Virus record (IMG/VR): IMGVR_UViG_3300021142_000002
Location: 156,367 to 220,366 of that record
Direction: 5' to 3' (one strand)
Length of the DNA stretch: 64,000 nucleotides
Shown piece by piece: positions 2,543-33,717 of this stretch (positions within the stretch are counted from its first letter, which is position 1; each line of letters begins with the position of its first letter). The translations under genes and the position numbers were made by a program. Under the pieces are notes generated by a model. It made no database searches. It was given only the letters and a program-made list of their open reading frames with translations, and was not told the DNA's origin.

Positions 2543-3049
2543 CTATGCCGTCCAATCGTTATCATCTTCTTTAACCTGATCTTCCTCCTCCACTGGGAAG
2601 ATCAGGTCCCAGTGGGGTTCTTCAAGTAATACTGGGCGTGGCTTTGTCACGTATTCGCAGTCGCTTAATGCGACTATTCCGGTCCATTGACCGGATTCCC
2701 CCCGGTAATCGGGGTCAGTATACTTCCCCATAACAATGGGGTGACGGCCATCGTCATGGTCATTTTTGCACATTGTGACTCCCTTCACAATGAACTTATG
2801 CCCCTTGGGGCAATATAACATCTGTCCCTCAAAGGCCGTTAGAGACCATATGGCCTCTATGTCTCTTAATAGATCTAAAATTGGTTGCAACTGCCCTTCT
2901 GGGCAGCTGAAAGCAGCGGATATTACTATCCGCTGCATGTTCTCTATATAGAGCAGCATCCATCTGGGGGTGCTCTCTTCCTCATACTCGTGCGAGTATG
3001 TGGCAACAAACTCATTAACCATTTGCATCAAAATTTCAAAAATGTTCAT
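2543..3049 (-). CDS. orphan early protein with atypically high GC
   Basis: 168-aa ORF starting directly from repeat cassette copy 1; visibly more GC-rich than its flanks; acidic C-terminus. Confidence 0.75.
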   Translation of the reverse strand: MNIFEILMQMVNEFVATYSHEYEEESTPRWMLLYIENMQRIVISAAFSCPEGQLQPILDLLRDIEAIWSLTAFEGQMLYCPKGHKFIVKGVTMCKNDHDDGRHPIVMGKYTDPDYRGESGQWTGIVALSDCEYVTKPRPVLLEEPHWDLIFPVEEEDQVKEDDNDWTA

Positions 3050-3154
3050 ATCAAATCTCCTGCCTCTATGAGGACTTTAAAAGTTATAGTAAGTTGGATT
3101 ACTTATATAAGTTAATCCATTAAAATAATATATACATGAAATTTTTTTTTGAAT
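3045..3154 (-). repeat. promoter-hairpin-RBS cassette, copy 1 (direct repeat of 33609..33717)
   Basis: Manual alignment: identical to copy 2 except one extra T in a homopolymer; contains TATATTAT (3125-3132), a hairpin (3096-3118), AGGAG and the ATG. Confidence 0.95.
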
Positions 3155-3182
3155 CCATTTTTAGATAAAAAAAAAGAAATAA

Positions 3183-3220
3183 TATACAGGGATGAGGATT
3201 ATAATCCTCATCCCTGTATA
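3183..3220. terminator. 38-bp perfect palindrome terminator
   Basis: TATACAGGGATGAGGATTA|TAATCCTCATCCCTGTATA downstream of the holin-like gene. Confidence 0.75.
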
Positions 3221-3233
3221 ATTAATTAAATTA

Positions 3234-3515
3234 TTATTTTACATCAGCACTATTATCTGCAGGTACGGTAGTATCAGTTACTGCAGGAGTGGGTTCTGTC
3301 GATTCTTTAATTTTCAGGCCAGCACCGACTGCAGTTAAGAATGCGCCTGCTGCGCCTAAAAAGTTCCATACGTCAAAATGTTGACTAGTATAAACATTGT
3401 AGCCTTCATAAATGATCGCTGCAAAGGAAAACAATAAAGCCAACCACTTTACTAGGTCATGTGTTTCATTATCTTTGCCAGTTAATATATGGCTAATTGG
3501 ATGATTTTTATCCAT
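3234..3515 (-). CDS. putative holin-like two-TM membrane protein
   Basis: Two hydrophobic segments; LTGKDNETHD and GAAGAFLTAVGAGL..K pattern recalled from small prophage lysis-associated proteins. Confidence 0.5.
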   Translation of the reverse strand: MDKNHPISHILTGKDNETHDLVKWLALLFSFAAIIYEGYNVYTSQHFDVWNFLGAAGAFLTAVGAGLKIKESTEPTPAVTDTTVPADNSADVK

Positions 3516-3524
3516 AATTAATTC

Positions 3525-4247
3525 CTATTGTCTTAAGATGTCTTCAATAGATTCATTTCTTTCACTCTTATTAACTAAGGCTGATGTTAAACCTTCATTA
3601 AAATGAGCACCTAGTAACTTAGCAGTGGTATTACTACTTTGATAAGCTACGGATTTTAATGGTACAAAGATAGGTTTAATTTTGCTATGAGGATCATTAA
3701 GTCTTGGATCGTGTCTAAAGAATTTAGCCCTATCTTCTTTTTGTCTGCACATAGCCACAGTTAATAATTCTAGTAGTGCAGCATCAGCACCTAATTTAGC
3801 ATTACCATGACTTAATGCAGTTTCAAATAAAACTGCATGATCTTCCATAGTAATGTACCAAGGCACTTTACCTTTAGAAATAATCTCATTATAAATACGA
3901 TATACTAAGGTACCAATTCTAATGAGATTAAGATTCTTAATAATGGTATCGCCTGCAATAAAACCAAACTCTAAATATTTCTCACCATGGATATCCACTG
4001 TATTGGTAGTACTTGGTTTAATTTCCATTAAGGTACAAGCATTACTAGTTGCATAATACTTGTCATCAACCGTCATACCGAAGATACCTACAATTCTAAT
4101 AACATCATCAATGGTACATAGACTAGCACTTGTATAATGTTCAGGAATATATATCTTACAAGGATGAACAGCTACTAATGAATCACCTACTTCTTTACAA
4201 GCAGCATGAACTTTAGCAGCATCTCGAATTAAGTGATTAACATTCAT
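3525..4247 (-). CDS. putative small vRNAP subunit (phiKZ gp176-like, beta' C-terminal part)
   Basis: Synteny downstream of the gp178/gp177-like genes; C-terminal SNTTAKLLGAHFNEGLTSALV resembles the beta' C-terminus; homology recalled, not computed. Confidence 0.55.
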   Translation of the reverse strand: MNVNHLIRDAAKVHAACKEVGDSLVAVHPCKIYIPEHYTSASLCTIDDVIRIVGIFGMTVDDKYYATSNACTLMEIKPSTTNTVDIHGEKYLEFGFIAGDTIIKNLNLIRIGTLVYRIYNEIISKGKVPWYITMEDHAVLFETALSHGNAKLGADAALLELLTVAMCRQKEDRAKFFRHDPRLNDPHSKIKPIFVPLKSVAYQSSNTTAKLLGAHFNEGLTSALVNKSERNESIEDILRQ

Positions 4248-4250
4248 CGT

Positions 4251-5630
4251 TTATACCGACATACTTACAATCTGTGATTTTAACCATCTAGCAATTAATC
4301 TAATGCACGCAATGTATAAGGCATAATCTAGATCAGGCTCTTTCATTTCATGTAAGATATTATCAATTTCTAATAAAATATCTTTTACATCAGATCCTTC
4401 AGTTAATGTTCTAGAAACTACTTTAATAACATATTGTACTAGATATTTAGCACCATGATATTCATGCTCTAATGCAGCAGTTAATCTTAATTGCATGGCA
4501 GCTTTATCAACACCTTCCATACCCATAATTAGTGTAGCCATGTAATCTCTGGTTACACGTCTTACTAGAGTAATATCTTCCAGTGTTTCTTTAGCCTTTA
4601 ATTGATTAATTTTCATGGTATAGATATCTGAATACTTTTCTGGATTATTTCTTAAATCCAGATCTCTATCTATAGCTGATGTATTGCCATGGGTAGATAA
4701 GAAACCTAAAGCAGCTTCAGGACTACCGCCTTTGTTTTGAATCCATTCTCTGTAGTTTGGACCATAAACCATTAGGCAATTGCGAGCTAAGTAATCAGTA
4801 TCGTTAAAACTTACTTTAGCTAAGATTTCACCATTAGAAATAGATCTATCATAAGCTAGTGTATCTCTATAGATCTTACCGGCAATAGCAGCTCGCAGTT
4901 TAGCGACCAATGCTCTTAAAGCAGTATCTTCCATTAAAGCTGAACACTTATCAGTTTTTTCATTTTGTATTCCAGTTAATAATAGGAAATACAAAATAGA
5001 TCTAGGCAGGCTTAACTGCGCCGTATCAATAGCATCTGGAATCGTTCTAGCTTCAGAGATAATATCTTTAAGATACTCAGTCGCCTTAGCGTCCAGTAAG
5101 TTAGAGCCTGTTTTAATTAGATCTTCAATTTCAGCTGAGGTAAAATCTTCAGCTAATCTTTTTGATAATTCATAACATTCAGACGATACAAAAGGAATAG
5201 TATCTTTATAAGGATCTAATAACTGAGTAAATAATTCATCAGTTAAAATACTAGGCATTTCAATTAACTTAATATTGCCCAGTAACCCTACGCTAGCTAA
5301 AGCACTTTCTTTTCTAACCTCTTCAACTTCTTTAACAATTGCTCTGCAATGGGGGTTGACTACATTCTTTGCTGTATCAATAATGTTTCCCATCACAATA
5401 GCAATCTTTTTAACACAGGCGGTTTCATAACCTGAATGTGTACCAAATGTATTATTGCCTTCAATTGATAAATCCATAATCCTTTCATCAGTCCCTGTAT
5501 CATTAATACAAGTTAATGTTTTAAAGATAAGATCTAATGCTGAGGCTTGTACCGGCATCAGTGCTTTACCACTATAAGTAGCTGCACTGACAATATGACT
5601 TGTTTCATTTAAAACCTTTCTGGTAATCAT
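4251..5630 (-). CDS. virion/internal head protein (phiKZ gp177-like)
   Basis: 459 aa, helical; position between vRNAP beta and the gp176-like gene. Confidence 0.5.
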   Translation of the reverse strand: MITRKVLNETSHIVSAATYSGKALMPVQASALDLIFKTLTCINDTGTDERIMDLSIEGNNTFGTHSGYETACVKKIAIVMGNIIDTAKNVVNPHCRAIVKEVEEVRKESALASVGLLGNIKLIEMPSILTDELFTQLLDPYKDTIPFVSSECYELSKRLAEDFTSAEIEDLIKTGSNLLDAKATEYLKDIISEARTIPDAIDTAQLSLPRSILYFLLLTGIQNEKTDKCSALMEDTALRALVAKLRAAIAGKIYRDTLAYDRSISNGEILAKVSFNDTDYLARNCLMVYGPNYREWIQNKGGSPEAALGFLSTHGNTSAIDRDLDLRNNPEKYSDIYTMKINQLKAKETLEDITLVRRVTRDYMATLIMGMEGVDKAAMQLRLTAALEHEYHGAKYLVQYVIKVVSRTLTEGSDVKDILLEIDNILHEMKEPDLDYALYIACIRLIARWLKSQIVSMSV

Positions 5631-5643
5631 TAGTATACTCCTT

Positions 5644-5847
5644 TTAAACAGCTAGTTCAGATAATAAAGCAGCGGCTACTAATTCTTCAGTTTCACTTTC
5701 TGCTAAAGGAGATTTACCTATTTTATCACCAATCATTTCTTTTAAAATAGCAGTCCCTAATGAGACTGCACAAGCGATTGTTTTCTTAGTAATGATTTGT
5801 TTTTCTGGTAACTTTTCTTCTACTACTAAATTTAGATCATCCATCAT
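5644..5847 (-). CDS. small hypothetical protein
   Basis: 67-aa ORF abutting the stop of the spliced vRNAP beta gene. Confidence 0.6.
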   Translation of the reverse strand: MMDDLNLVVEEKLPEKQIITKKTIACAVSLGTAILKEMIGDKIGKSPLAESETEELVAAALLSELAV

Positions 5848-8800
5848 TTATCCTCTTTTATATTTTAAACCCATTTGTTTAGAAAGCTCTTTTAGTACGG
5901 TATTCATAACACCCATAATTTCTGGAGAAACTACGATACGTGCAGCAACGGCATAAAATCCAAATAAAGCATCGACTTTAATGCCATTTCTAGCAATAAT
6001 GGGTGAGGTAGAAACTCGGCTAATAGTAGATTTTAACTGATTAGCAAACACGACTTTCCTTTTTGTTCCATTAATTCGTTAGATTAATGCGGTGTGCAAA
6101 GACACCCGCCCTTACTTTCATAAGGGAGCAGATCATATCATCCACCTATTTGTAGGTGGTTTCCCATTTCTTCCCACTTGGGGTCTACAGGGTGGTAAGC
6201 CCTTGATCGTTGAACGTTCTCCATGTATTCTAATGAATATTTAGGAGCTTCGCTGCTGATTGCCCAATCTTTATTATTTTTAAACATTCATATTTCTTTT
6301 CAAAAATACAGTAGTTAATAAAGCTCTAAGGGATTTCCAGCAATTAAGGAAAAACGAATATAATATTACTATTATACCGGACTAATTATTTAATTAAACA
6401 ACTCTTCAATGATCCAGCCATTATATGGCATTTTATAATGTAATCTATTTTTAAGGGTCTTTTTATCTAAACCTAAATATTTACGTAATGTTGCCGAGCT
6501 ATTGAATTTTAAAATTTCATTATCTTTTATGTTAGTTATAATAAAATTTCTGGGAACAGAATGTTTAACTGTATAAAAGTTATCTAACCATTCTTTATCA
6601 CTTTTAGATCTAAAAATAAAATTACCAATAGCAGTTTGCCGTTCAGAATAAACAGCTTTACGTACCATTGAAATATCAGTATTTGTTATTTTAGCCAGAG
6701 TGGTTGCATGTTCTGCATGTATTATTTCACCAGTTTCAATATTTTTAGCTTCATATCCGTTTGTATTCTCAATTATTTGATTTCGTTTTTCTGGTGTAGT
6801 GTAATACCATTCTGTAGTGTCATTGATATCTTTAATTTCAAATCTTTTACAGAATAGTCTAGGTATTAAAATGCCATTAATTAATTTCTTAAATGGTCTG
6901 TTATGGAATTTTAATCCAATACTTTTAAACCCAGCAGTGTGAGAATGGTACTCAGTTATAGTATTATTTAAATAATCTCGTATAACACAGCGCTTATTAT
7001 CAGTTCTTAAATTGCTAATAAAGGCATGATTATTATTTTCTCTTGGCGTAACCCATTCCAAATTAATTATACGGTTATCTAATTTATTACCATTTTTATG
7101 ATTAACATAAATTTTGTTACTTATATCGCTATTATATATAAATGCTTTAGCCATCAGCAAATGTGTACATACGGGACGCCATCTATTTTTATCAGGATCC
7201 CTAATATTAACACATGGATATCCATAAGGATTTAGTCTTATACTCATTTCTAAATCTTTATTTTTATATAACGAAATAACTTTACCATTCTTATTTATAG
7301 CAAAATTAGTAAAACCAGGAATTATTCTAAACCCATTCTTATAAAGAATAGGGTTAGTAAAATACATTACCATACCACATCTAACCTTTAATACCCTGCT
7401 AGTTATTGGCATAAATTTTATTTTAACTAATTCATTAAGGGGTAACTTTACATCATAATGGCATAATAAACTAACCCATGTTTTATCCAATTGCACTATT
7501 TCACCAGAAATTTCTATATCAATAAATTGATCGTTTAAAACTATATCTTTTCCCTTAAATCTATAATTTCCATTAATATCAAATGAATGGTCTTCATTAA
7601 GATAAAATTTTTTATACATGTTATTTAACCTATAAATGATTGAATGTGTGTATAAATAATATATATCTTAAAGAAATTTGTGTTTATTAAAAGGAATAAT
7701 CACCGCAATTCATTGGCAGCTCACCATCTATATAGATTTTAATAGCCAATTGATTTTCTACCACTTTCTTACCTGCTATTCGTACCGTCTCATCTATTCG
7801 TCCAGTCTTAGCTTCATCTAATTGATATCGCTTTACACGCTTAGCTCTATTGGAGTCATAATACTCTGCAATCTTTTGCAAACTAAAATGCATATCATCT
7901 ATTTTTCCATAGTAAACCACTTCAATATCAGTTACTTTACCATAGACTTTAGCTTTCGGATTATTAGCGTTAATAGCTGTTAAAGCCTTAATAGCTGCGG
8001 CATCTTTAGCATCCACATTCTCGCCAATAGCCTGCTCTAAAGTACATAATATTGTTTCAGGGTCCACTACATCACCTATTTTTACTAGGTTATGAATGAT
8101 GGTATCAAAGTCTACTATTACCCCGTGCAGAGTCGTTGTAGGCGTTACTAATTTACTAGCCAGTTCACTAGTAATAACTGATCCATCTTCAGTAACATCC
8201 ATATTTTCTACTAAAGCTACTTTACAAATTAAGCTGCCTTTATAGACAACATTTCTAGGATTTATTTCTGATCTTTGAAAGAATCCAGAGTTAAAGACTA
8301 ATGCATCACCTTTTTTAAACTGATGTCCTTTCTTTAAATCACTGATTCTAGTATGAGGTATAGTAACACCCGATACAGTACCATGATAAATACCTAATTC
8401 ATAATTAACCAGTCTATCTTTACCATACTTAACAGTTAAAACATCTTTTTTATTATCTTCTACAATACCATCTTCTTCTGCAGTAACAACAAAGATATCA
8501 TCTGCTTTAGCACCAATGACTTCTTCATAACCTGTTCTATAATGACTAGGATGATATCCATTGCAGGCAACTGTATGACTATCCTGAATGCCTTTATAAT
8601 TTACGCGTTTACTATCATCGTGACTTAATGAAACACCAGCTAGGGTGGTACTACTTAATGCATTAGTGGCCCCATCTTTCTCATGATTAAATTCTCTAGT
8701 AACTCCTCTTAAATTGACAAAGTTAGGATTAGCTGTAAAGTATGCTCTAATACCTACCTTAGCACTATCTGGAGTAGACTCCGATATAACACCTAAATCC

Positions 8801-11481
8801 TTTTCATTATAAGCTCTAGTCTCCTTTACCATTGTTTCAGCAGATCTACCACCTGCGCCGCCATGAGTAAAAGATTCATGCTCCTTTAGATTGTGCAGTG
8901 GATTACTTTCTTCTACTAATGATACTGACTGATCTTGAATGATATCTAGCCAAACCGATTTAGGATTAATAGTCACACCCACATTACTCATACTACCACC
9001 TGCCCTGTGAGTACGCATAGCAGTAATCAATTGATGGTATAACAAGCCCGATAGTCTTTCATAACCTTTATACCTAACTGCATTTAAATCATGTACAAAG
9101 TCATCCACTAATAAGCTATTAGCTCTTAATAATAAATGATAAAAATCAGTAGGCTCTCCCATCTCCTTTAATAGATTAAGAGTAATGGGTTCCATCCACA
9201 TATCAAACATTAGTTTTAGTTCTCTTAAGTGATAATTAGTGACACCTAATCCACTCATTAAACTACTGTAAATATTAGGTCTATTAAAGTCACTTCCTTT
9301 ATATTTAGAGATATCATTTTTAATAGCCAGTAATCCACCGACTATTAATTTATCTGCAGGTTTAGTTACTGTAATAACGTAGACGATATCTTTAAACTTT
9401 AGTTTAACTTCATCTGGATGATAAGCTAATCTTACATTAGTTGCTGAGAGTGTAAAAGGTATTTGTAATTTCTTTAACATCTCATCTAAACCAAAGAGAT
9501 AAGAAAAAGCTAGGCCTAATGGAATACGTCTATTAAAGACTGACATTTCAGAATATTCAATAGGTCCATTACCTAATGATGGATCTATTAAATAAGGTAT
9601 AGTGCCTAATTCCTCAATTGAATCAGCTTTGGTGGATCTAATACCACTACCCCAGAATGTATAAACAGTCCCCTCATTATCCATTCCTAATAAACCTAAT
9701 CCGCCAATTAACTCCCCAACTACCACGCAGTCTTCATCCTTAATTTTTTCATATAAAGAATGATCGTATTCATGTAATTTCTTTTCTATAGCAAAGTCTA
9801 AATGATATTGGAATCTAATAATTCCATCTACTAAAAATCTTCCACAGTCAAAACTGGTAATTGCTTCACAAATAGCCGTATAAGCTCTAGGTAATTGCAG
9901 ATTCTTTATTTTATTAATACCATAGAGTAGATTACCAATAGTTCCATCATTTTTAGTAAATCTATTTATAATCTCTTTTAAAATCCATTTACTGTAGTTA
10001 CTTGCTACACTTTCATTTCTAGTAACAAATATCTTTCCATAATAACTAGTCAAAGAAACAGTATTAGATTTTACCTTAAAAATTGGAAGTTCTCCGCGCT
10101 GACTAGTTAAAGAATAGCGTATTCCACCAGCTACGAAAGTACCATCAGCATTAACTACTGGTATAGTAAAATGAATAGTACTCGCCTCCCCATTAATAGG
10201 TTGCAGTGATACACTGTAGGTATCAGATTTAGTAACTGCATTATTCTTTCTTTTTACTTTAATATCCTTTACTATTACCCCACCTTTGTGTAAATTTAAC
10301 ACTGTGGCTATAATATCTTTAGGCAATACTTCAGTAACGTATTTACTCGTAAATTCTTTCATGGTAGAGTGTAGCATACTCTCATCATGAATAGTAATAC
10401 TTTCATCTAATAATTTAGTATCAGTAATAGTTAAATCATTATCGGTAATTGCCATTTCCTCTAGTGTCTTGCCAGAGCCATGAGGGTCTAATATTGTCTT
10501 ATACTTTTGACTGAGTTTTAATAATCCTTTTTGTTCAGCTTCAGATAGAGCACCCATTTCTCCAGCTTCTTTAATCTTCCTTACAATGACTTCGTTAGAT
10601 ACTAAATCATTTTCCCCTAAGTCCTTATCATTAATATCTACAATGTCTGGATTGTTAGGTGTTCTTAAAGCTACTATACCATCCAGAAAGTGATATAAGC
10701 TATTCATGCAGACTTCAGGATCTTCATGTGACCAATCTAATAGATCCTTTAATCTAATGATAATAGTATTATTTAACTCTACAAAGACTAGATTAACATG
10801 TTCGATCGCTTCATCAGATACTTTAGTAATAACTGATTCAATACTAGGGTTAATGATTCTCCATAATTCTAATAAGTCAAAACTCTCATTAGTGTGAAAA
10901 TCTGCTAGTCCATTACTCGTAAAGTTCTTAGTATATTTACTTAAGTCAGATCGAGTAGGCAATATCTCTGGCAGTAGATATCTAATAAAGTGCTCTCTCC
11001 TACCACCAATCTGATTAATCATATCCCACATAGTCAGTCGAATGTTATACCATTCTTGATAGACGACTAAGGTATTATTAGTATACTTATTTAATCTAGG
11101 CAATAGAGCATAGTTAATAACAATAGGGGCACTATTGTTACTTAATGACCTATCTAGATTAGTCAATGGTTTAATATTTAGATGTGTTTTTTGATATCGT
11201 CTGATAACATTATTAATAGGTATATTGGTGCTACTTACATTGCCAATACCTACCTTTAAATGTAGCATGTGATAAATATAGATTGGGCTACTATTTCCAT
11301 TTCTAATTAAACAATAGGAGTTGTCTATCCCTACTGTTTGATCAGTTTCCCCAATATAGTGAATAACACTATTACTGGGTAGAAAAAACTGACTCGATGG
11401 ATTATGTTTACCACCATTGACTATCTTACCAATGGGATAAGTCAAAAACTTTTTATCCCATTCTTTTATTGGTAAATACAT
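5848..11481 (-). CDS. virion RNA polymerase beta subunit, large part (phiKZ gp178-like); spliced, join(11481..7699, 6057..5848), ~1330 aa
   Basis: Beta motifs ETxAYNEKDLGVISESTPDSAKVG, HDDSKR, EDGSVI; splicing restores the conserved GD|KVVFANQLK in frame. Confidence 0.9.
6390..7619 (-). CDS. intron-encoded HNH homing endonuclease (NUMOD4-HNH with C-terminal HTH modules)
   Basis: [13 protein letters not shown] (NUMOD4), [36 protein letters not shown] (HNH), NUMOD1-like C-terminal segments. Confidence 0.92.
   Translation of the reverse strand: [409 protein letters not shown]
7656..7673 (-). promoter_or_regulatory. putative early-type promoter inside intron 1, upstream of the HNH gene
   Basis: Minus strand CTTTAAGATATATATTAT matches the motif at 2449, 3125 and 33689. 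Confidence 0.5.
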
Positions 11482-11490
11482 TACTTACTC

Positions 11491-13626
11491 CTATTCATAT
11501 ATTTTAGTAAAGCTATTGAGCACGAGTGGACTAACTTTATCAATAACTCCGTATAATAATCCGCCACTAGGATTCATAAATGATTTTTTATTATTCATAA
11601 ACTTTTTAGCTTCCTCTACCGCTTCTTTTGAGATTACAAAATTTAGAGAGACTTTCGATTTGTTCAGATGAAGTCGTTAATTTCACCTCGCAGCATTACC
11701 TGCAGCTATAACTCTCGTTATAGACCAGACTATATCTTCTACCTATTAATATATTCATTAATATACCAATAGGCAGCTTCCCATTTCTTCCCACTTGGGC
11801 TTTACACCGTGGTTAGCGGTTAGTCGTTGAACGTTCTCCATGTATTCTATAGAATATTTAGGAGCTTCGCTGCTGATTTTCTCTACCTAATAGTTTTCAA
11901 ACATTGGTATTACTTTTCAATAATACAGTAGTCTATTAGTCTAACAAGATGTTCCAGCAATTAAAGAAGAATCTATCCCAGTATTACTACTGAGTAGGAC
12001 ACTGATACTTAAACTATTTTATACTTAAAATGCCAATCTGAATTAATGGGTATTCCATTTAGATTCCTAATAATAGCTTTTCGGTTTACTCGAGTAACAC
12101 CTTCAGCTATTTATAAGTATTACGATAAAAAGTATTCAGAAAAATAAGTACAACTAGAATAAGCTAGAATCACCATCGAAATCTGCTTGTAATCCTTCGG
12201 GTTTAGAACTGTGTACCGATACTGAATCTATAAAAGGTTGTCCTTTAATAGGCATGTTTATAGCCTTAGATTCATTTTCTACAGGACACCAATTATCATC
12301 CAATCTTTGCAGAATTTCTGTTTTTACTGTTGTTTGCAGGTAAACCATACTGCAGTAAATACTGCCTGTACCTACAATGGGATATCTTGTTATATAGGTA
12401 GCTACTTCTTTACTTTGTAGATAAACGGAAATATAAAACATTTCAGTCCAAGTAATAGGTGCTACATTCTTTCTATCTAAACGTTTAGGTAAATCAGTAA
12501 TGTCATAAAAGACCCTAAAGTATTTATCATCCCTATAAAGCAATGCTGCATAATGACCATCTATTATAATAGGCTTATGCCTTGCATCTAATTTAGCATA
12601 ACCAGTTAATAGTTTTTCAATACCTTTTTCACTGCCCCAATTATCTTTAACAAAAGTAGAAGGTGTAATCATTCTTTCTTCTAATGTCTTGCTATCGACT
12701 ACCCAGATATCATTAGGTAAGTTATTGACTATTCTATTCATTGGACCTGCTTTAATTCCATAGATAGATAGCTCAGTAGTACCCTTTAAATACTGGTGTA
12801 AACCACAGGTTGTATCATTAACAGTAACTGCATCTATATCGCCTAATTTCTTAGGAGCAGGATCAATTGCAGTGATTACATTTCGTGTTCCGCCATGAAT
12901 ACTGCGGCTTGCCCATTTGGATAAGAAGAATCCTCTTTTACCCTCAAGGATAGATTCTATGTAATCATAGATGTTATTAAATCCTAATTGGAGAGACCAT
13001 CTAACAGTATCTAAGATGGGATCATTTTTAGCGGTAGAGAAAGTAGAAATAGTATTAGCAGATCGCATGACTTTTCTATAAAGCGCGTTAATGTCATCTT
13101 CAACAGTTCTTTTATTTTCATCTATTTCAATGTCTCTAAGACCTGCTGGAATAACGACTAAATACCGATACATACATTTTTCATGAGACTTATCTAGAAA
13201 CTTAATTCTTAAATCTCTAATCGGTGAATTATTTTCAGCATGTAAGATATCATGAAAGTGTTCCATAAAGAAGGCATAACCTGTTCTGCCATCTATGATA
13301 TTAGATTTTACAAAGTCTTTTAGATTATTATCCCAAGTAGCATAAGCTGCTCCAGACATAATAAGTTTATATAAACCTTTTAATCTAGTGAGTTCTAAAA
13401 AGACTTTAGGATGCATGACTTCAGTACGCATGTCTATATAAGACAGTCTTCTTTGTCTAGTAGGTGATCCAAGATCACCAAAGATAATAGATGAATATAA
13501 ACCTTGTGGATTAAATGATCCATCAATGGTATAAATATCCATTGACTGAGTAGGCAGTAAGCCTGCTAATCGACTCTTATCAGGAGAGAGTAGATATAAA
13601 TTAAATGGTAATCGCTTGAGTGCCAT
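11491..13626 (-). CDS. virion RNA polymerase beta' subunit, catalytic part (phiKZ gp180-like); spliced, join(13626..12169, 11655..11491), ~540 aa
   Basis: GKRGFF, RNVITA, TRYP and catalytic ADFDGD; the 54-aa exon 2 KVSLNFVISKEAVEEAKK...KIYE* is absent from the ORF track and in frame after splicing. Confidence 0.92.
11656..12168 (-). mobile_element. group I intron (IA2-like, 513 nt) without an intact ORF
   Basis: 5' exon ends in U and intron ends in G; P AAUUGCUGGAAC, Q AAUCAGCAGC, R UUCAACGACUA, S AAGAUAUAGUCU. Confidence 0.93.
12009..12110 (-). pseudogene. probable C-terminal remnant of a homing endonuclease gene
   Basis: Startless frame IAEGVTRVNRKAIIRNLNGIPINSDWHFKYKIV* resembles a NUMOD1-type HTH end; its stop lies at the same position relative to the intron core as the HNH stop in intron 1. 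Confidence 0.6.
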
Positions 13627-22215: not shown

Positions 22216-24297
22216 TTAAACATGGACTAAAGTATATTTATTATCTAATTCTAACTGGCAAGCAATAGCTGTTAAGGGATAATAAACTAGAGTATTTAGA
22301 CTATCCATAGAGGCCGTAATAAAAGGAGATTGATTAAAAATACTCTCTCCGTTTCTAATAACCATATCAAAGCTTGGGCAAATTTGATAAAGTGCACCGC
22401 CAAAGAATCTAGAAACGGTTTGTCTACCCATCGCTGCATCATCTTCATTATTAGAATAATTACTCAATAAAGTAACTACAATGTAATAAAGATAATCAGT
22501 AGATATTGTGCCCGCATAATTATTAATTAAGTCTAATACGATTCTATAGTTACCTGCTTTAGCACCTACTTCCATTGCCTTTTTGGTAGCATAGATTAAA
22601 TAATCGCCTGATAAACCAGCACTCGTTAATATACTTGTAGGCTCATTATTACTATTTATCTGTGTAGATAATGTTGTTAATTGAGTACTATTTAAATTAG
22701 ATAAGATAGGTAATGCTGAAATAACGGCTGTTGAATCTAATCCATTTAAATTATTAGTAAGTACAGTAGCATTAGCTGCATTCAATGCATTAATAGTATC
22801 AGATACTGATATTACATTATTAGATCCCATTAAGGTGACTTGAGCCAATGCAGTATTTAAATTAGAAGTAGTTTCTAAACCAATTAGACCCATATCAGTA
22901 CTGATAGTATTTGCACCATGGGTAGTTGCAAGCGTTAATAAGGTATTAGCATTAGTTATAGTCAAGGTATTAATACCATTAATTAAACTAATACAGTATG
23001 TTATACCAATAGTATCTAATAATGTATTTAAATTAGCAATTAAAGTAATTCCATGATTTTGAATGTCAGTGAGTACTGTACCATTATTAGTACTGCCATG
23101 AGCCGTTATATAGGCTGCTATGTTAGTAGCTTCTACTTCAGTAATAATGCCTAGCATGATAGTAGGCTGTATACCAGCAATATCATTAAATAATTGAGTC
23201 AGTACAGTTAAGCCTAACGTTTGTAATTGAGCTACGAGATTAGTAACAGTACTAATACCATACGTGTTGATGCCATTGGCTACTGTAGCTGCGGCTGTAG
23301 GATTACTATTAATAACACCAATTAAAGTAGTCGCATCAGTTTTTCCTAATTGAGTGACTATATTGGCTACATTTTTATAAATGTTAGGTGAAGTACTCGT
23401 ACCAATAGCAGTAATTAAATTAGAGGTATTGGTATAGCCCGAACTATTAATTGTATTAACTAAGTTAGATACTGTCGTTATACTCGATGCTTGAGTAGCT
23501 GTTGCAATGATACTCACCTGAGTACTAGTAGAATTATTAAGCAATGGCAATGCATTAGTAGCATTGGTAATACCTAAATTTCTTAATGTATTAGAAATAG
23601 AGGTAGGTGTAGTAGTCGATAAACTAACAGTCGCTAAAGCTACACCTGCTTTAGCAATAGGATTGCCACTATAAGTATACCCGCCACCATGATTAGCTGG
23701 ATATCCTCTAGCCGCATTAAAATCCAATGAGCCTTTAATTTGATTAGTAATAGAGCTAATGTCAAAGAAATGACTCATTTGCCCCATAAAACTCAATCCA
23801 TTGGTAGTAAAGACTGCTGGTAAGTTTTCTACAGTAATTCCAATTTGACGAGCTTGGTAAAGAAATGTTTCTAAATGATTAACAGTATTTAAAACCCCAG
23901 ACATTCTTAGTATATTAACTAAGCTTAAATTCCTAGGTATTCTGTTTTGTAAGTTTAAAAGAAACTGTTCTAAATTCTGTCCTTTTAGCAATAGCTGCTG
24001 AGCTAGTCCTGGTAAACCTTTAATACCATCTATTAGTTCAGGAGGTAAAACACTTTCTACGTAATCTACTACACTATCAATAGCTAACTCTGCTTGATTT
24101 AAAATACCTAATTCTACTGTAGAATAAGGATCAACGGTTACTTTTTCTAAAAAAGGGGATAGTTCAAAATCAGTAGGGAGTATATCTTTGATGGGTGATG
24201 GTGCCGGCACTGGTGTAGTGACAGGTTGAGTATTTATACCCAGTGAAGATAAATCTATTTTTGAAAGATCTAAACCATGTGAATTAATAACAGGCAT
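22216..24297 (-). CDS. probable virion protein with a long T/N/L/I-rich charge-poor helical region
   Basis: ORF track 22216..24363; likely start MPVINS at 24297 because a palindrome overlaps the longer start. Confidence 0.6.
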   Translation of the reverse strand: MPVINSHGLDLSKIDLSSLGINTQPVTTPVPAPSPIKDILPTDFELSPFLEKVTVDPYSTVELGILNQAELAIDSVVDYVESVLPPELIDGIKGLPGLAQQLLLKGQNLEQFLLNLQNRIPRNLSLVNILRMSGVLNTVNHLETFLYQARQIGITVENLPAVFTTNGLSFMGQMSHFFDISSITNQIKGSLDFNAARGYPANHGGGYTYSGNPIAKAGVALATVSLSTTTPTSISNTLRNLGITNATNALPLLNNSTSTQVSIIATATQASSITTVSNLVNTINSSGYTNTSNLITAIGTSTSPNIYKNVANIVTQLGKTDATTLIGVINSNPTAAATVANGINTYGISTVTNLVAQLQTLGLTVLTQLFNDIAGIQPTIMLGIITEVEATNIAAYITAHGSTNNGTVLTDIQNHGITLIANLNTLLDTIGITYCISLINGINTLTITNANTLLTLATTHGANTISTDMGLIGLETTSNLNTALAQVTLMGSNNVISVSDTINALNAANATVLTNNLNGLDSTAVISALPILSNLNSTQLTTLSTQINSNNEPTSILTSAGLSGDYLIYATKKAMEVGAKAGNYRIVLDLINNYAGTISTDYLYYIVVTLLSNYSNNEDDAAMGRQTVSRFFGGALYQICPSFDMVIRNGESIFNQSPFITASMDSLNTLVYYPLTAIACQLELDNKYTLVHV

Positions 24298-24334
24298 CTT
24301 AAAGCTCCATTTTAAACAAAAAAAAATAAGATTA

Positions 24335-24358
24335 GGTAGATAGCCTAGGCTATCTACC
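24335..24358. terminator. 24-bp perfect palindrome
   Basis: GGTAGATAGCCT|AGGCTATCTACC; shares core GATAGCCTAGGCTATC with 21549. Confidence 0.7.
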
Positions 24359-26214: not shown

Positions 26215-26239
26215 TAATTTGAAATACTGGAATTTATTT

Positions 26240-27101: not shown

Positions 27102-27116
27102 AAAAGGGTATTAATA

Positions 27117-27146: not shown

Positions 27147-27152
27147 TTATTT

Positions 27153-28887: not shown

Positions 28888-28891
28888 AAGG

Positions 28892-29698: not shown

Positions 29699-29707
29699 TT
29701 TATTCTC

Positions 29708-30672: not shown

Positions 30673-30679
30673 AAAATAC

Positions 30680-32140
30680 CTAGCTATTAAGTTTATGTTT
30701 AAATTCTTTTTTATAAGTTACTTTATCATCATTTAACCAATAGGGATGATATAAACCTTTTCTCATTCTAAGAAGATCTAAAGTCGTTAATTGAGGTAAT
30801 TCAAATTGTTCATACTCTTTAAACGTCCACCATGACCGAGTATTTAAAAGTATGGACCAATCATAGCCTAATGATTTTAGATCAGTGTAGAGCTCTTGAG
30901 GCGTACACATGAGGTCATCTGGAAGAGTAGCCCACAATTCTTTAATTTGTAACATCTCAGAAGTAATCTCTAATGCTCTTTGCAAGAATGCATTACTATC
31001 AATAATGTTTCTAACAGTTGTTCTTTGTATTTTTACATCAGGTAATAAAGATAATGAATAACTAGTGTTATTACCTTCAAATCCAAAACGACCACTTTCT
31101 TTAATATAATGGAACATAGAAAGATGAGGCAGTACACCTTCTCTTTGCGATAGAATTAAATCAACTACAGCACCTGATGGACCACCTTTATTACGTGTTA
31201 GTTTTAGGGTAACAATCGTTAAATCAGTACAATCAGGTAGTCTATCGGATTCAATAGCAGGATAGAGTACGCCTGTGCCATAATCTTTATTGTTAAGCAT
31301 ATTGGCATTAAAGATTTCATACAATGCATTATTAATAAATTCAAAGGCTTTAGTAGTACCCGTTACTTTACTACCTTTTTTAGCAAACATGAGTTTATGC
31401 TTTTTGGGAGCCATCATGCCCATTTCAAATTCATCGCCTACATGGGCTGTCATCAAAAAATGCATGGATGCATTAGCGGCCATATTAGGCAACTGAGTAA
31501 TCAATTGCTTTTTAGCTCCGCCTTGTCTCATCCATAAAATGTTCATGCCACTGTCACCAATACTGTTTTTATCAACAATACTTTCTTCATTATTGGTTAC
31601 TTTTAATTCTGATAATGAATCAATAACGGATATAGTCGGTGGAATGACTAAGATAGGTTTATGTTCTGGTGTGAAAAAAGGTGTAGTTAATTTAGTTATT
31701 TTTTTATCTTTTTTAGCTTCAGCAATTTCTAATATCTTATCAAAGTATACGTCACCTAACTCTTCAGCACTGCTCGTTATTTTTACTTTAATGTTTTCTA
31801 TATCACTGTATTGGTCAGAGTGATCTATTTTAGATAAATTAGGTAATCGTTTACAGAAAGTATTAACCCTATCATAATTAGAAGATACTTCACTATCATA
31901 GATGCTCGTACCCATGGGGGTAATTCTATCAGTAGCCACCAATGCAATGTGGTAGATAATACTGGTTTTACCTGCATTACCAGGACCTACTACCGATAAA
32001 ATATGAGGCATACCGCCTGATAAAATAGATTGTCCATACTCACCAAAGTGATAAGTTCCTGTGGGTATATCTAGCATACTACCGCAGTTATAAGCAGGTC
32101 TAAAGGGTGGTATTGAAGATAAAGAAGATAAAAAGTTCAT
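30680..32140 (-). CDS. uvsX: UvsX/RecA-like recombinase (phiKZ gp152-like)
   Basis: LDIPTG, Walker A GPGNAGKT, Walker B SVIDSLSE, KLTRNKGGPSG. Confidence 0.8.
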   Translation of the reverse strand: MNFLSSLSSIPPFRPAYNCGSMLDIPTGTYHFGEYGQSILSGGMPHILSVVGPGNAGKTSIIYHIALVATDRITPMGTSIYDSEVSSNYDRVNTFCKRLPNLSKIDHSDQYSDIENIKVKITSSAEELGDVYFDKILEIAEAKKDKKITKLTTPFFTPEHKPILVIPPTISVIDSLSELKVTNNEESIVDKNSIGDSGMNILWMRQGGAKKQLITQLPNMAANASMHFLMTAHVGDEFEMGMMAPKKHKLMFAKKGSKVTGTTKAFEFINNALYEIFNANMLNNKDYGTGVLYPAIESDRLPDCTDLTIVTLKLTRNKGGPSGAVVDLILSQREGVLPHLSMFHYIKESGRFGFEGNNTSYSLSLLPDVKIQRTTVRNIIDSNAFLQRALEITSEMLQIKELWATLPDDLMCTPQELYTDLKSLGYDWSILLNTRSWWTFKEYEQFELPQLTTLDLLRMRKGLYHPYWLNDDKVTYKKEFKHKLNS

Positions 32141-32233
32141 AACAAAAATGCTCCAAAGTGTTATACTGTGTAAGGTAGTTCTTCGTATAAAATAAAGGCT
32201 ACCAATAATTTTTAAACTCTATGGGCACAAGCT

Positions 32234-33049
32234 ATGTTATTAAGTGATTTAATGGAAAATCAAGAGCATCAAGTAATCCCAGGCAATGAAGCTATTTTAG
32301 ACTTAAAAGCTTTTAATAACTTCTTTGGTGGTTTTATAGATAGCTTAACTAAAGTATTTGATGCAAAAAGATTGATCCCTTTAATGCAAGGGAAAACCGA
32401 CGTATATGATGCGGTAAAGAATATTGAAAAATGTACAGTATTTGATTTAGAGCACTTTATTGTACCTACACCGGAATATGTTGTTGGTTTAATAGTACCT
32501 TATTTAACTGTATTAGAAGAAGTAACTACAGAATTACTGACAATTGATGATAGACTATTAACCCATTTAGAACAATGGGCTGGTAACATGATTACTGATA
32601 AAGAGTATGTTAATAAGGTATGGATTAACATGCCTGAGAAATCTAACATTGTTGAAGTTAATAGTGATAAATTGCATAAGTACTTTAGTGATGCAGCAGG
32701 TGATGGCTTAAACGGTCAATTATTTATTAATGTCTATAAAGATGCTAAAGGCTTAAAAGAAGCCGATGTCATGTTGGAAAAGTTAGTAGCCTTATCGTGC
32801 AGAGCATTAAATGGAAAGTTAATTGAAAGGGCCAACTCAGTGGCTAAAATGATCCATAGACTCTCTAATGATAATAGAGTAGATTCAGCACTATCTCAAG
32901 TCACTGCTGATAAATTAAAACCTATTACTGAATTGACTATTCAAGCGGCTAGAGAATTAGAACTATTAGCTATTTGTTTATTTCAAATCAGAACAGTAAG
33001 TTACGCATATAACGAAACATTGACTAAAATTAATGTGCAAATGAAATAA
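32234..33049 (+). CDS. probable virion head protein (phiKZ gp153-like)
   Basis: Divergent from uvsX as in phiKZ; helical 271 aa. Confidence 0.5.
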   Translation: MLLSDLMENQEHQVIPGNEAILDLKAFNNFFGGFIDSLTKVFDAKRLIPLMQGKTDVYDAVKNIEKCTVFDLEHFIVPTPEYVVGLIVPYLTVLEEVTTELLTIDDRLLTHLEQWAGNMITDKEYVNKVWINMPEKSNIVEVNSDKLHKYFSDAAGDGLNGQLFINVYKDAKGLKEADVMLEKLVALSCRALNGKLIERANSVAKMIHRLSNDNRVDSALSQVTADKLKPITELTIQAARELELLAICLFQIRTVSYAYNETLTKINVQMK

Positions 33050-33071
33050 AAAAAAAAGAAAAGATTGATAC

Positions 33072-33107
33072 ATAGAGTAGTCAGAGCATATGCTCTGACT
33101 ACTCTAT
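33072..33107. terminator. 36-bp perfect palindrome between convergent genes
   Basis: ATAGAGTAGTCAGAGCAT|ATGCTCTGACTACTCTAT. Confidence 0.75.
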
Positions 33108-33157
33108 TTGTTAAATGCTATCCCCCCCCCCATAGCATTTAAATTGATTTGTAAGGG

Positions 33158-33613
33158 TTAATATATCCATTCTATTAAATTTTCCTCACTGACCTCAAAA
33201 CCTACTTCCCGATCTCCTTCTTTCCAGAGGTTGGTTAAGACCTCCTTACCGCCATTTGGATGCTCAAGTGTTAATTCCGTTACTTGACGTTTTCCGTCAT
33301 CAATGAAAATATTACTTACAACCTTTAAAATGTTGTAGGTAATTCCAGCATTAACACTATCCCGAAGATCCATTATTAGATCCCCAGGTTTAAAGTTACT
33401 TTCGTTCATTACATTGTCGTAATCAACGAATGAATTCTGGAACTGATCCTCCCCCCCCGTATTTGTAATGAAAAGAGTTTTTGTTAAAATCTTTTCATTG
33501 TTCCCCTCGCCCGTGAACATATGGATACAGCCAATGACCGCGTTATCGGATCCAGCATAGTACCCCTTCTCAGAAAAAGGAAATAATTCTGTTTTGATTT
33601 TTATATATTTCAT
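33158..33613 (-). CDS. orphan early protein driven by cassette copy 2
   Basis: 151-aa ORF beginning at the cassette ATG; internal G8 tract. Confidence 0.75.
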   Translation of the reverse strand: MKYIKIKTELFPFSEKGYYAGSDNAVIGCIHMFTGEGNNEKILTKTLFITNTGGEDQFQNSFVDYDNVMNESNFKPGDLIMDLRDSVNAGITYNILKVVSNIFIDDGKRQVTELTLEHPNGGKEVLTNLWKEGDREVGFEVSEENLIEWIY

Positions 33614-33717
33614 ATCAAATCTCCTGCCTCTATGAGGACTTTAAAAGTTATAGTAAGTTGGATTACTTATATAAGTTAATCCATTAAAATAATATATACA
33701 TGAAATTTTTTTTGAAT
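33609..33717 (-). repeat. promoter-hairpin-RBS cassette, copy 2
   Basis: Identical to 3045..3154 except one T; offset 30,564 bp. Confidence 0.95.

What the first reader, a model, noticed from the sequence alone, without database searches (positions are those of the whole stretch)
3045..33717. Near-identical 110-bp promoter-hairpin-RBS cassette driving two unrelated orphan genes 30.6 kb apart
3045..3154 and 33609..33717 are the same except one T in a homopolymer. On the minus strand the unit reads AAAAATTTCATG-TATATATTAT (early promoter), GGATTAACTTATATAAGTAATCC (hairpin), CCTC-ATA-GAGG (mini hairpin), AGGAG and ATG. Identity ends two bases into codon 2, and both cargo ORFs are followed by hairpin terminators. 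Non-coding identity this high in a genome whose paralogues are otherwise diverged implies recent copying or gene conversion. It resembles the PeSL promoter-early-stem-loop elements of T4-like phages that shuffle early gene modules. It may be an analogous plug-in expression and recombination cassette in a phiKZ-like phage; I do not recall one being described.
Basis: partly seen in the sequence, partly recalled or inferred. Interest (0 to 1): 0.78.

Follow-up and report, generated by a model that had tools for sequence, protein, structure and literature searches.

The report
Repeated promoter-leader cassette for foreign genes
An uncultivated freshwater phiKZ-like giant phage carries about eight copies (three nearly identical) of a roughly 110-base promoter, structured-leader and ribosome-site module; each copy drives a different small, self-contained gene whose base composition looks foreign, and two distant relatives show the same arrangement, so it looks like a standard plug for wiring in newly acquired genes.

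Summary
Window 3045-3154 and 33609-33717 (minus strand) differ by one base of a homopolymer. Ten or more independent assemblies carry both copies, and unitig depth is about three times that of the flanks.

The 220-kb genome holds three near-identical copies, three at 75-80% identity, one partial copy and one distant copy. All are co-directional with their genes.

Each copy has the same layout:
- an upstream terminator;
- a conserved block, ATTCAAA-N5-TTTCATG;
- a variant of the phage's own AT-rich promoter motif;
- a hairpin at the predicted transcript start;
- an A/U-rich spacer;
- a mini-hairpin next to the Shine-Dalgarno sequence;
- ATG, one unrelated ORF, and a terminator.

The cargo ORFs are the GC-richest genes in the genome, and most have no known relatives.

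Two distant relatives (UvsX 51% and 61% identical) have their own homogenised versions in front of their own GC3-richest genes. One of them shows compensatory changes in the mini-hairpin.

The copies are mosaics of each other, which indicates recombination between them.

My reading is a clade-conserved, concertedly evolving expression module for lineage-specific, probably horizontally acquired genes. It works like a PeSL or a moron but is not a PeSL member. Promoter activity, transcription start and mobility are inferred, not shown.

The parts
3183..3220 (-). Intrinsic-terminator-like hairpin of the upstream 93-aa gene, followed by a T-run; precedes cassette A
   Evidence: 17-bp stem, T-rich tail; sequence
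3135..3154 (-). Cassette A upstream block ATTCAAA-(A-run)-TTTCATG, found only in this promoter subclass
   Evidence: TTTCATGTATATA occurs only in the 7 family members; conserved in relative G005
3121..3134 (-). Cassette A AT-rich promoter core TATATATTATTTTA, a variant of the genome-wide motif TATACATTATCTA
   Evidence: motif enriched upstream of genes, about 45 intergenic copies; promoter activity is inferred
3096..3118 (-). Cassette A leader hairpin 1 (GGATT-A-ACTT / AAGT-AATCC), at the predicted 5' end of the transcript
   Evidence: a hairpin sits at the same position with different sequences in c43k, G003 and G005
3063..3073 (-). Cassette A mini-hairpin CCTC-ATA-GAGG next to the Shine-Dalgarno sequence
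   Evidence: two compensatory pairs against copy c116k (CCCT..AGGG); the analogous hairpin in G005 covaries
3047..3061 (-). Cassette A Shine-Dalgarno AGGAG (3061-3057), 7-nt spacer, and ATG (3049-3047)
2543..3049 (-). Cargo A: 168-aa acidic ORFan; GC 0.467 (rank 2 of 209 ORFs), GC3 0.54 (rank 1)
2500..2535 (-). Terminator-like hairpin plus T-run that closes cargo A
2446..2458 (-). Ordinary promoter motif TTTATATTATCTA of the next gene, listed as a comparator for the general promoter class
   Evidence: genomic 158824
33729..33759 (-). Terminator-like hairpin upstream of cassette B; shared at 86% with the flank of copy c150k
33609..33717 (-). Cassette B, whole unit: block 33717-33699, promoter core 33698-33685, hairpin 1 33682-33660, mini-hairpin 33637-33627, SD 33625-33621, ATG 33613-33611
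33158..33613 (-). Cargo B: 151-aa acidic ORFan; GC 0.371, GC3 0.38 (rank 6 of 209)
33041..33133 (-). Two hairpins and a T-run that close cargo B
   Evidence: sequence
30680..32140 (-). UvsX-like recombinase, a candidate enzyme for exchange between copies; also used as the anchor to find relatives

Best explanation
The repeat is a portable expression module, not a gene and not a mobile element. It is a specialised subclass of this phage's own AT-rich promoter. By analogy with phiKZ this is the early type read by the virion RNA polymerase. The promoter is fused to a fixed leader of about 70 nt and a strong ribosome-binding site.

Proposed working:
1. A polymerase recognises the TATATATTAT-type core. 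The class-specific upstream block ATTCAAA-N5-TTTCATG tunes or times this step.
2. Transcription starts at or next to hairpin 1, so the mRNA begins with a stem-loop.
3. An A/U-rich spacer and a mini-hairpin directly 5' of the AGGAG keep the ribosome site in the same local context whatever ORF follows.
4. Terminators on both sides make each unit an insulated one-gene transcript.

The module is used for lineage-specific accessory genes with atypical composition, which are most probably horizontally acquired. The copies are kept alike within a genome by homologous exchange (duplication or gene conversion). This explains three copies at 98-100% identity and the mosaic copies.

Shown here: the repeat, its copy number, the mosaicism, the terminators, the cargo composition and orphan status, conservation of the architecture, and covariation in relatives.

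Inferred: promoter activity, which polymerase reads it, the transcription start, the stabilising or insulating role of the hairpins, and recombination as the route by which cargo is gained.
For: Family and identity.

Not an artefact.

Promoter core is a variant of a motif found about 45 times in intergenic DNA, 35-50 nt upstream of start codons, and also in relatives. phiKZ early promoters are likewise conserved AT-rich elements with 31-40 nt leaders (PMC7598289; PMC8244752).

One-gene units closed by terminators.

Cargo genes are unrelated to each other. Cargo A and B have no homologue among 5.8 billion proteins or in GenBank phages. None of the six larger cargo proteins matches a Pfam or PHROG family.

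Cargo composition:
- GC ranks are 1, 2, 3, 4, 7 and 24 of 209 ORFs. GC3 is higher than background by Mann-Whitney test, p = 2e-5.
- The three highest 400-bp GC peaks of the 220-kb genome are cargo genes.
- Virion genes have average GC3, so this is not a signature of high expression.

Replication in relatives:
- G005 has 5 members in front of ORFs with GC3 ranks 1, 2, 3, 6 and 7 of 97 (p = 2e-7).
- G003 has 5 near-identical copies, four of them in front of top-GC3 ORFs and the fifth before a 6-codon stub (p = 5e-6).
- Cargo sets do not overlap between the three phages.

Leader structure:
- A hairpin follows the promoter in all three lineages, with different sequences.
- The mini-hairpin next to the SD in G005 is 100% paired, with 4 of 5 pairs changed on both sides. 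The covariation score is 0.92 against 0.33 in shuffles (0 of 500 reach it).
- Two compensatory pairs occur within G000.

Recombination:
- Copy c150k is 86% like B in the terminator flank, 98-100% like c140k in the core, and 92% like B and c24k at the SD-ATG end.
- Within-genome identity is 84%, 92% and 77%, against 62-66% between genomes.
- A UvsX-like recombinase is encoded.
Against: - There are no transcript data. No RNA run was listed, so promoter activity, timing and transcription start are unverified.
- The hairpins are weak as RNA: hairpin 1 is -3 to -5 kcal/mol, and whole-leader z-scores are -0.5 to -2.4.
- The arms of hairpin 1 are conserved in sequence between the two subfamilies of this genome rather than covarying. 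That would also fit a protein-binding site.
- GC enrichment is mainly at third codon positions. GC12 is only modestly raised (p = 0.002, 0.03 and 0.09), so a selective cause cannot be excluded.
- No donor was found for any cargo gene.
- The population sampled is clonal and shows no cargo polymorphism.
- The covariance model did not detect the G003 cassette. I link it to this class by architecture and a partial motif only.
- ORF sets come from my own simple caller, and the relatives are fragments (31-41% complete).
Confidence: 0.68

Rival explanations
1. Regulon operator. The conserved hairpins and the ATTCAAA..TTTCATG block are binding sites for a phage regulator, either a DNA-binding repressor or activator at the start site or an RNA-binding translational repressor in the style of T4 RegA. 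The eight genes would then be co-regulated, and identity would be maintained by selection on the binding sites rather than by recent copying. This is compatible with the best explanation for everything except the cause of the identity.
For: The hairpin 1 arms (GGA(A/T)T..AATCC) and the upstream block are conserved in sequence between the subfamilies of this genome. The block is conserved in G005. The loop (G/A)ATGA of the G005 mini-hairpin is conserved while its stems vary, as expected for a recognised loop. Small palindromes follow many ordinary promoters too.
Against: The three best copies are also identical in spacer positions and into codon 2, where no binding site is expected. The mosaic breakpoints and the genome-specific homogenisation need recombination in any case. 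No candidate regulator was identified.
Confidence: 0.3
2. Host sigma-70 promoter, as in true PeSLs. TTCAAA (-35) and TATTAT (-10) would be read by the host polymerase immediately after injection.
For: The scan finds TTCAAA-17-TATTAT in copy A and TTCAAA-16-TATTAT in copy B, 9 of 12 matches. The ATTCAAA element is conserved in all members and in G005.
Against: The number of such matches equals that in shuffled AT-rich sequence. Spacing differs between A and B. In subfamily 2 the best -10 is TACCAT at a 15-nt spacing. The -10 region instead matches the phage-specific motif shared with about 45 other intergenic sites that lack any -35. phiKZ-type phages transcribe independently of host polymerase (PMC8244752).
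Confidence: 0.12
3. The cargo genes are native rather than foreign. Their high GC3 would reflect selection tied to this expression class, such as mRNA stability against AU-specific RNases or a codon preference for an early burst. Their orphan status would reflect fast evolution.
For: All 15 cargo genes in the three phages deviate in the same direction. The effect is strongest at third positions and weak at positions 1 and 2. The first 60 nt or so of each cargo are AT-rich like the phage. No donor was found.
Against: Virion genes, which are expected to be highly expressed, have average GC3. No tRNA genes exist that could create a phage-specific codon regime. The two cargo genes with recognisable families belong to patchily distributed small viral or archaeal families, MJ1673-like and STIV B116-like. 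Cargo sets are entirely different in the three relatives. Decayed or truncated cargo follows some copies, as expected under gene gain and loss.
Confidence: 0.3
4. The repeat is a selfish mobile element, such as a MITE, a transposon end or a homing-endonuclease target, that happens to land upstream of genes.
For: It is a dispersed repeat with sharp boundaries. Group I introns and an endonuclease context exist elsewhere in this genome and its relatives.
Against: All eight copies lie on the coding strand, exactly abutting a start codon and after a terminator. I saw no terminal inverted repeats, target duplications or conserved 3' site. No transposase or endonuclease lies next to any copy. Depth equals the three assembled copies.
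Confidence: 0.04
5. The repeat is an assembly or chimera artefact.
For: Several assemblies break exactly at the repeat. One 30.6-kb contig starts in copy A and ends in copy B.
Against: Other independent assemblies read through with the same flanks. The unitig of the core has three times the flank depth in four runs.
Confidence: 0.01

Closest known systems
PeSL (promoter-early stem-loop) cassettes of T4-like phages (Arbiol et al. 2010, PMC2839356; Comeau et al. 2014, PMC4122927)
   Same: A repeated intergenic module of about 100 bp that combines terminator, promoter, SD and start codon. It sits directly upstream of ORFans in variable regions and offers homology for recombination between otherwise unrelated genes. 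Here the copies are mosaic and homogenised within each genome. In G003 and in the B/c150k pair the upstream terminator is part of the repeat.
   Different: The promoter is not a clear sigma-70 promoter but a variant of the phage's own AT-rich motif. The conserved stem-loops lie in the transcribed leader and lack a U-tract, so they are not terminators. There are about 8 copies per 220 kb rather than about 50. The phage is phiKZ-like, not T4-like. No mini-circles or cargo differences between strains were observed. Cargo genes are compositional outliers, a property that the PeSL sections I read do not describe.
Morons of lambdoid and other tailed phages (Hendrix, Juhala and colleagues; from my own knowledge, not read here)
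   Same: A single extra gene with its own promoter and terminator, inserted between conserved genes, with base composition unlike its neighbours, and present in one phage but absent from relatives.
   Different: Here the promoter and leader are not foreign. They are the phage's own standardised, repeated and conserved module, and only the ORF is atypical. The phage is presumably lytic, so expression from a prophage does not apply.
Early (virion-RNAP) promoters of phiKZ and other RNAP-encoding jumbo phages (PMC7598289, PMC8244752)
   Same: A conserved AT-rich element of about 10-13 nt upstream of many small non-structural genes, with leaders of 30-40 nt, in a phage that encodes multisubunit RNAP subunits. 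The A-run followed by TTTCAT at about -22 recalls the phiKZ 'middle' motif (an A-rich repeat plus TACT centred at -22).
   Different: The cassette subclass adds a conserved upstream block and a fixed, structured 70-nt leader that is conserved well beyond the promoter. In the papers my searches returned, no long repeated leader of this kind is described for phiKZ-like phages.
ompA-type 5' UTR mRNA stabiliser of E. coli (Belasco and colleagues; from my own knowledge)
   Same: The same order of elements: a hairpin at the 5' terminus, an A/U-rich single strand, a second hairpin, then the ribosome-binding site. It can be transferred to other coding sequences.
   Different: The cassette leader is much shorter with weaker stems. 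Neither its 5' end nor any effect on stability has been measured.

Membership tests
PeSL (T4-like phages) | Sigma-70-type -35/-10 early promoter with an AT-rich upstream region | tested here: inconclusive
   TTCAAA-16/17-TATTAT scores 9 of 12, no more frequent than in shuffles. It is poorly kept in subfamily 2. The core matches the phage-specific motif instead.
PeSL (T4-like phages) | The conserved stem-loop acts as a terminator or attenuator of upstream transcription | tested here: not met
   The conserved hairpins lie downstream of the promoter core and have no U-tract. Terminators do precede each copy, but their sequences differ except in B/c150k and in G003.
PeSL (T4-like phages) | Shine-Dalgarno and start codon of the downstream gene form the 3' end of the motif | tested here: met
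   Identity runs through AGGAG-N7-ATGAA.
PeSL (T4-like phages) | Positioned immediately upstream of ORFans in variable regions | tested here: met
   Cargo A and B have no homologues. The B site corresponds to a variable region next to UvsX in relatives.
PeSL (T4-like phages) | Dozens of copies per genome (about 50) | tested here: not met
   8 members in 220 kb by nhmmer and covariance model.
PeSL (T4-like phages) | Genes flanked by the element differ between closely related phages | tested here: inconclusive
   No close relative is available. All population samples are identical. Relatives with 51-61% UvsX identity have wholly different cargo.
PeSL (T4-like phages) | Mini-circles formed by recombination between neighbouring elements | tested here: inconclusive
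   The core unitig has about 3 times the flank depth, which equals the three copies. No joints were reported, but only Logan contigs were available and these drop rare forms. The 30.6-kb 'DTR' contig is explained by assembly breaks at the repeat.
Moron | A single gene with its own promoter and its own terminator | tested here: met
   By sequence signals only.
Moron | Base composition unlike that of the neighbouring genes | tested here: met
Moron | Absent from the same site in related phages | tested here: met
   No cargo homologue and no cassette B in the syntenic UvsX region of L044, L046 and L048. The relatives are distant.
phiKZ-type early promoter | Conserved AT-rich element upstream of many early operons, in a phage that encodes a virion multisubunit RNAP | tested here: met
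   Motif census and RNAP beta-like ORFs. The virion versus non-virion assignment was not made.
phiKZ-type early promoter | Transcription start about 5-10 nt downstream of the element, early in infection | not testable with these tools
   No RNA run was listed.
Integron-like gene cassette | Conserved recombination site at the 3' end of each cargo (attC-like) | tested here: not met
   The 3' flanks share only T-runs. I did not search for an integrase.

The most novel reading that the evidence does not exclude
A clade of freshwater phiKZ-like jumbo phages has a dedicated gene-capture and expression platform. A conserved promoter-leader module, shared across divergent phages, would serve as the homology patch through which co-infecting phages, using the UvsX-like recombinase, swap or acquire foreign ORFs. 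The same module would guarantee their transcription, mRNA stability and translation. In function this would be a phage analogue of an integron or PeSL system, for a polymerase that is independent of the host.
Probability: 0.3. Interest if true: 0.8.

Novelty: new variant of a known kind. Interest (0 to 1): 0.62.

Why it matters
Jumbo phages that build their own transcription system cannot rely on a foreign gene's own promoter. How they wire in new accessory genes, such as anti-defence or host-takeover functions, is largely unknown.

A conserved, homogenised module that marks exactly the compositionally foreign, fast-turnover genes would give two things:
- a sequence tag for finding recently acquired genes in uncultivated jumbo phages;
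- a natural, compact promoter, leader and RBS part whose elements can be tested for polymerase specificity, mRNA stabilisation and context-independent translation.

There is also a practical consequence. The repeat breaks assemblies and has produced a false 'direct terminal repeat' genome in IMG/VR.

Tried and rejected
- Rfam: no family matches the cassette. The only matches lie on the upstream terminator and are far below threshold.
- Exact-pattern scans of IMG/VR and JGI metagenomes: apart from this phage and G005, the hits look like chance matches. L144/L149 carry a tandem pair of the motif that I did not follow up.
- Single-protein searches for related loci found only the same phage.
- Whole ENA or NCBI contigs of relatives could not be searched.
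- RNA runs: none was listed.
- Laying contigs found no joints.
- Cargo function: no Pfam, PHROG or PDB-sequence hits. The protein atlas gave nothing useful for cargo A. The c24k cargo folds confidently (pLDDT 92) but has no Foldseek match in the PDB.
- Paralogy among cargo genes or among neighbouring genes: none.
- A conserved 3' recombination site: none.
- MAFFT and covariance-model alignments did not align hairpin 1 or the G000 mini-hairpin structurally. For G000 I counted pairs by eye; the formal count was possible only for G005.
- A search for the c150k homopolymer variant in other IMG/VR contigs found nothing.


Full report
**Observation**

On the minus strand, window 3154..3045 and 33717..33609 are identical except for the length of one A-run (A9 versus A8). 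A 46-nt core occurs exactly twice in the window, against zero expected. Identity begins at ATTC and ends at ATGAA, two bases into the second codon.

The unit is not an artefact:
- At least ten independent JGI and ENA assemblies carry both loci with the same flanks, and several read straight through.
- In four separate freshwater runs the 105-nt core unitig has about three times the word depth of its flanks (for example 130.9 against 38.5-52.4, and 54.8 against 14.1-15.9). This fits three near-identical copies per genome.

**The family is larger than reported**

The window is the last 64 kb of a 220,366-bp viral contig with 33% GC.

BLAST, an nhmmer profile and a covariance model found the following members, all on the minus strand:
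- a third near-identical copy at genomic 24232-24352;
- a second subfamily at 75-80% identity at genomic 116.8k, 140.0k and 149.9k;
- a partial copy at 74.7k;
- a distant member at 43.1k (covariance-model E = 0.007).

A self-comparison shows that the cassette pairs are the best dispersed repeats of 100 bp or more in the genome.

**Anatomy**

Every member sits at a gene start. Read 5' to 3', each has:
1. a terminator-like hairpin of the preceding gene;
2. the block ATTCAAA-N5-TTTCATG, which occurs only in this family;
3. an AT-rich core, TATATATTATTTTA or TATATA(C/T)CATTTA;
4. a hairpin (GGATTAACTT..AAGTAATCC, or GGAATTAC..GTAATCC);
5. an A/U-rich spacer;
6. a 4-bp mini-hairpin directly 5' of GCAGGAG;
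7. seven bases and ATG.

Each cargo ORF is followed within about 60 nt by a strong hairpin and T-run. The units are therefore insulated one-gene transcription units.

**Relation to the phage's ordinary promoters**

K-mer enrichment upstream of ORFs gives one dominant motif, TATACATTATCTA. With up to two mismatches it has 81 sites, 45 of them intergenic. Most lie 35-50 nt upstream of a start codon on the coding strand, and many are followed by a small palindrome and TTAGGAGAAA. The same motif occurs in relatives.

The phage encodes multisubunit RNAP beta-like proteins, a UvsX-like recombinase, SbcC-like and RNase H-like proteins. Its UvsX is closest to Vibrio phage BONAISHI (43%) and to phiKZ-type Pseudomonas phages (39%).

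In phiKZ-type phages, conserved AT-rich elements centred near -10 mark early promoters read by the virion polymerase, and leaders are 31-40 nt (PMC7598289; PMC8244752). The cassette core is a two-to-three-mismatch variant of the general motif. I therefore read it as a subclass of that promoter type with an added upstream block and a longer, fixed leader. This is an inference; no RNA data could be found.

A sigma-70 reading (TTCAAA-16/17-TATTAT, 9 of 12) is no better than chance in this AT-rich DNA and is poorly conserved in subfamily 2.

**Cargo**

- The cargo proteins (154, 235, 153, 213+, 168 and 151 aa, plus small hydrophobic peptides at two copies) show no similarity to each other.
- Cargo A and B have no homologue in GenBank phages or among 5.8 billion proteins beyond their own cluster.
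- None has a Pfam or PHROG family.
- The c24k cargo belongs to a widespread family of small proteins. It has 379 distant hits, labelled MJ1673-like by precomputed annotation. It folds confidently but matches no solved structure.

The new finding is compositional:
- Of 209 ORFs (mean GC 0.331, sd 0.038; mean GC3 0.244, sd 0.058), the cargo genes rank 1, 2, 3, 4, 7 and 24 in GC.
- They take five of the six highest GC3 values, with the sixth at rank 10 (Mann-Whitney p = 2e-5).
- Independently of any ORF calling, the three highest 400-bp GC peaks of the whole genome are the cargo genes of c24k, A and c140k.
- GC rises within the ORF and falls again at the terminator.
- Virion genes have average GC3 (0.18-0.24), and there are no tRNA genes. 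A general pull of expression level toward GC-ending codons is therefore unlikely.
- GC at codon positions 1 and 2 is raised less (p = 0.002).

I read the cargo as recently acquired foreign genes. Selection specific to this expression class remains a live alternative.

**Relatives**

UvsX homologues led to related contigs. In the syntenic region next to UvsX, relatives carry different small genes and neither cassette B nor cargo B.

G005 (110 kb, GC 32.7%, UvsX 51% identical):
- The covariance model found cassette-like sites.
- It carries AATTCAAA-N4/5-TTTCATATATATATA, then a hairpin of different sequence, a spacer, a 4-6-bp hairpin with loop (G/A)ATGA next to the SD, and ATG.
- There are five such units. 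They front small terminator-closed ORFs with GC3 ranks 1, 2, 3, 6 and 7 of 97. The rank-5 ORF is the second gene of one unit and has the mini-hairpin only (p = 2e-7).
- On five G005 copies the hairpin next to the SD is 100% paired, and four of five pairs change on both sides. The covariation score is 0.92 against 0.33 in shuffles (0 of 500 reach it) and at most 0.14 when slid.

G003 (88 kb, GC 29.9%, UvsX 61% identical):
- It has five copies, 87-99% identical to each other, of its own version: ATTCTAA-N5-TTGAATATATATA, a 9-bp hairpin, and AATAGGAGTAAGAACATGAA.
- Four of these copies front cargo ORFs with GC3 of 0.31-0.38, against a genome mean of 0.16; the fifth precedes only a 6-codon ORF (p = 5e-6).
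- The covariance model did not detect this version. I link it to the class by architecture and partial motif only.

Cargo sets of the three phages share nothing. One G005 cargo is a STIV B116-like protein.

**Exchange between copies**

A segment-by-segment comparison shows mosaics. Copy c150k has three differently related segments:

| Segment of c150k | Best match | Identity | Comparison |
|---|---|---|---|
| Terminator flank | B | 86% | at most 64% to the others |
| Promoter, hairpin and spacer | c140k | 98-100% | 73-76% to B |
| SD to ATG | B and c24k | 92% | 67% to c140k |

The 5'-flank type (ATGTCAATTC or AATGGATTC) and the core subfamily occur in all four combinations.

Mean cassette identity is 84%, 92% and 77% within G000, G003 and G005, against 62-66% between genomes. 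This is the pattern of concerted evolution, or of repeated re-copying within each genome.

Signs of gene gain and loss:
- c150k's ATG is one base out of frame (an A6 run) with the long ORF that opens at the cassette.
- c116k drives only a 28-codon ORF followed by about 440 nt of non-coding DNA.
- One G003 copy is followed by a 6-codon stub that shares its first codons with another copy's cargo.

**How it most likely works**

- Shown: a conserved, repeated signal module placed between a terminator and a single atypical ORF that is closed by its own terminator; leader hairpins conserved by position and, for the one next to the SD, by compensatory change; and recombination among copies.
- Inferred: a phage polymerase starts at or next to hairpin 1, giving a 5'-terminal stem-loop that protects against 5'-end-dependent decay. 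The A/U-rich spacer and the hairpin next to the SD keep the ribosome site accessible whatever ORF follows. This layout recalls the ompA 5' UTR (my own knowledge). The upstream block sets class-specific strength or timing; it resembles the A-run plus TACT element at about -22 of phiKZ middle promoters.
- More speculative: the module, being shared and conserved, is also the homology through which new ORFs are swapped in.

**Comparison with known systems**

The closest described system is the PeSL of T4-like phages (features read). It works alike, but membership fails on promoter type, on the role and position of the stem-loops, on copy number and on phage group. The units also meet the operational definition of morons, except that the promoter and leader are native and standardised. 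My literature searches returned no description of such a cassette in phiKZ-like phages.

**Verdict**

The repeat is a real feature. It is a new variant of a known kind. I rate interest as moderately high because the association with compositionally foreign genes replicates in three lineages and is directly testable.

Noticed in passing
window 11706-12020 (-); also window ~6153-6354 and genomic 106.6k, 107.0k, 107.7k: A group I intron (Rfam RF00028, 77 bits) lies between two RNAP beta-like ORFs (7687-11481 and 12154-13626). Self-BLAST shows a family of similar elements at four other sites, including a 98-bp patch at 98% identity (genomic 107165-107262 versus 162614-162711).
   Followed up: partly
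window 4244-4351: This is the only megablast match of window 2000-12000 to GenBank phages: 81.6% identity to an unannotated stretch of Serratia phages 2050HW and Haymo and Pectobacterium phage ParM-25. In 2050HW the stretch lies between an RNAP beta subunit CDS and a putative endonuclease. It may be a conserved exon end next to an intron carrying a homing endonuclease.
   Followed up: partly
IMGVR_UViG_3300021127_000026 (equals genomic 159421-190073; window 3055-33707): IMG/VR classes this 30,654-bp contig as having direct terminal repeats, only because it begins in cassette A and ends in cassette B. CheckV completeness is 11%. The repeat breaks assemblies and imitates genome termini.
   Followed up: yes
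genomic 149877-149927 (outside the window; L004): In copy c150k the cassette ATG is one base out of frame (an A6 run) with the ORF of more than 213 aa that is open from the cassette onward. The ATG frame stops after 9 codons. This could be a real frameshift or pseudogene, or slippage.
   Followed up: partly
genomic 116400-116840 (L005) and G003 64300: Some cassettes drive only stubs. One drives a 28-aa hydrophobic ORF followed by about 440 nt of AT-rich non-coding DNA with a 60-nt GC-rich island (no tRNA or Rfam match). A G003 copy drives a 6-codon ORF that shares MNW with another copy's cargo. These look like decayed or truncated cargo.
   Followed up: partly
whole genome; for example window 2446-2458, 7653-7665: The general promoter-like motif TATACATTATCTA has about 45 intergenic copies, typically 35-50 nt upstream of ATG. 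It is often followed by a small palindrome and TTAGGAGAAA, and is conserved in relatives with 57-61% UvsX identity.
   Followed up: partly
genomic 42150-42419, 138882-139184, 150721-151119: Further ORFs with raised GC3 lie directly beside cassette units c43k, c140k and c150k. The cassettes therefore mark small islands of atypical composition.
   Followed up: no
contig ends: genomic 85-262 versus 219937-220366: The two contig ends share diverged repeats of 80-87% identity. A second assembly of the same phage is 221,502 bp. CheckV nevertheless estimates 75% completeness.
   Followed up: no
L144 / L149 (IMG/VR contigs 3300025462_000009 and 3300005859_000002): An unrelated low-GC viral contig carries two tandem copies, 110 bp apart, of ATTCAAAGGTGATTTCATATATATATTATAAT. 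This could be a similar promoter in another phage group or a chance match.
   Followed up: no
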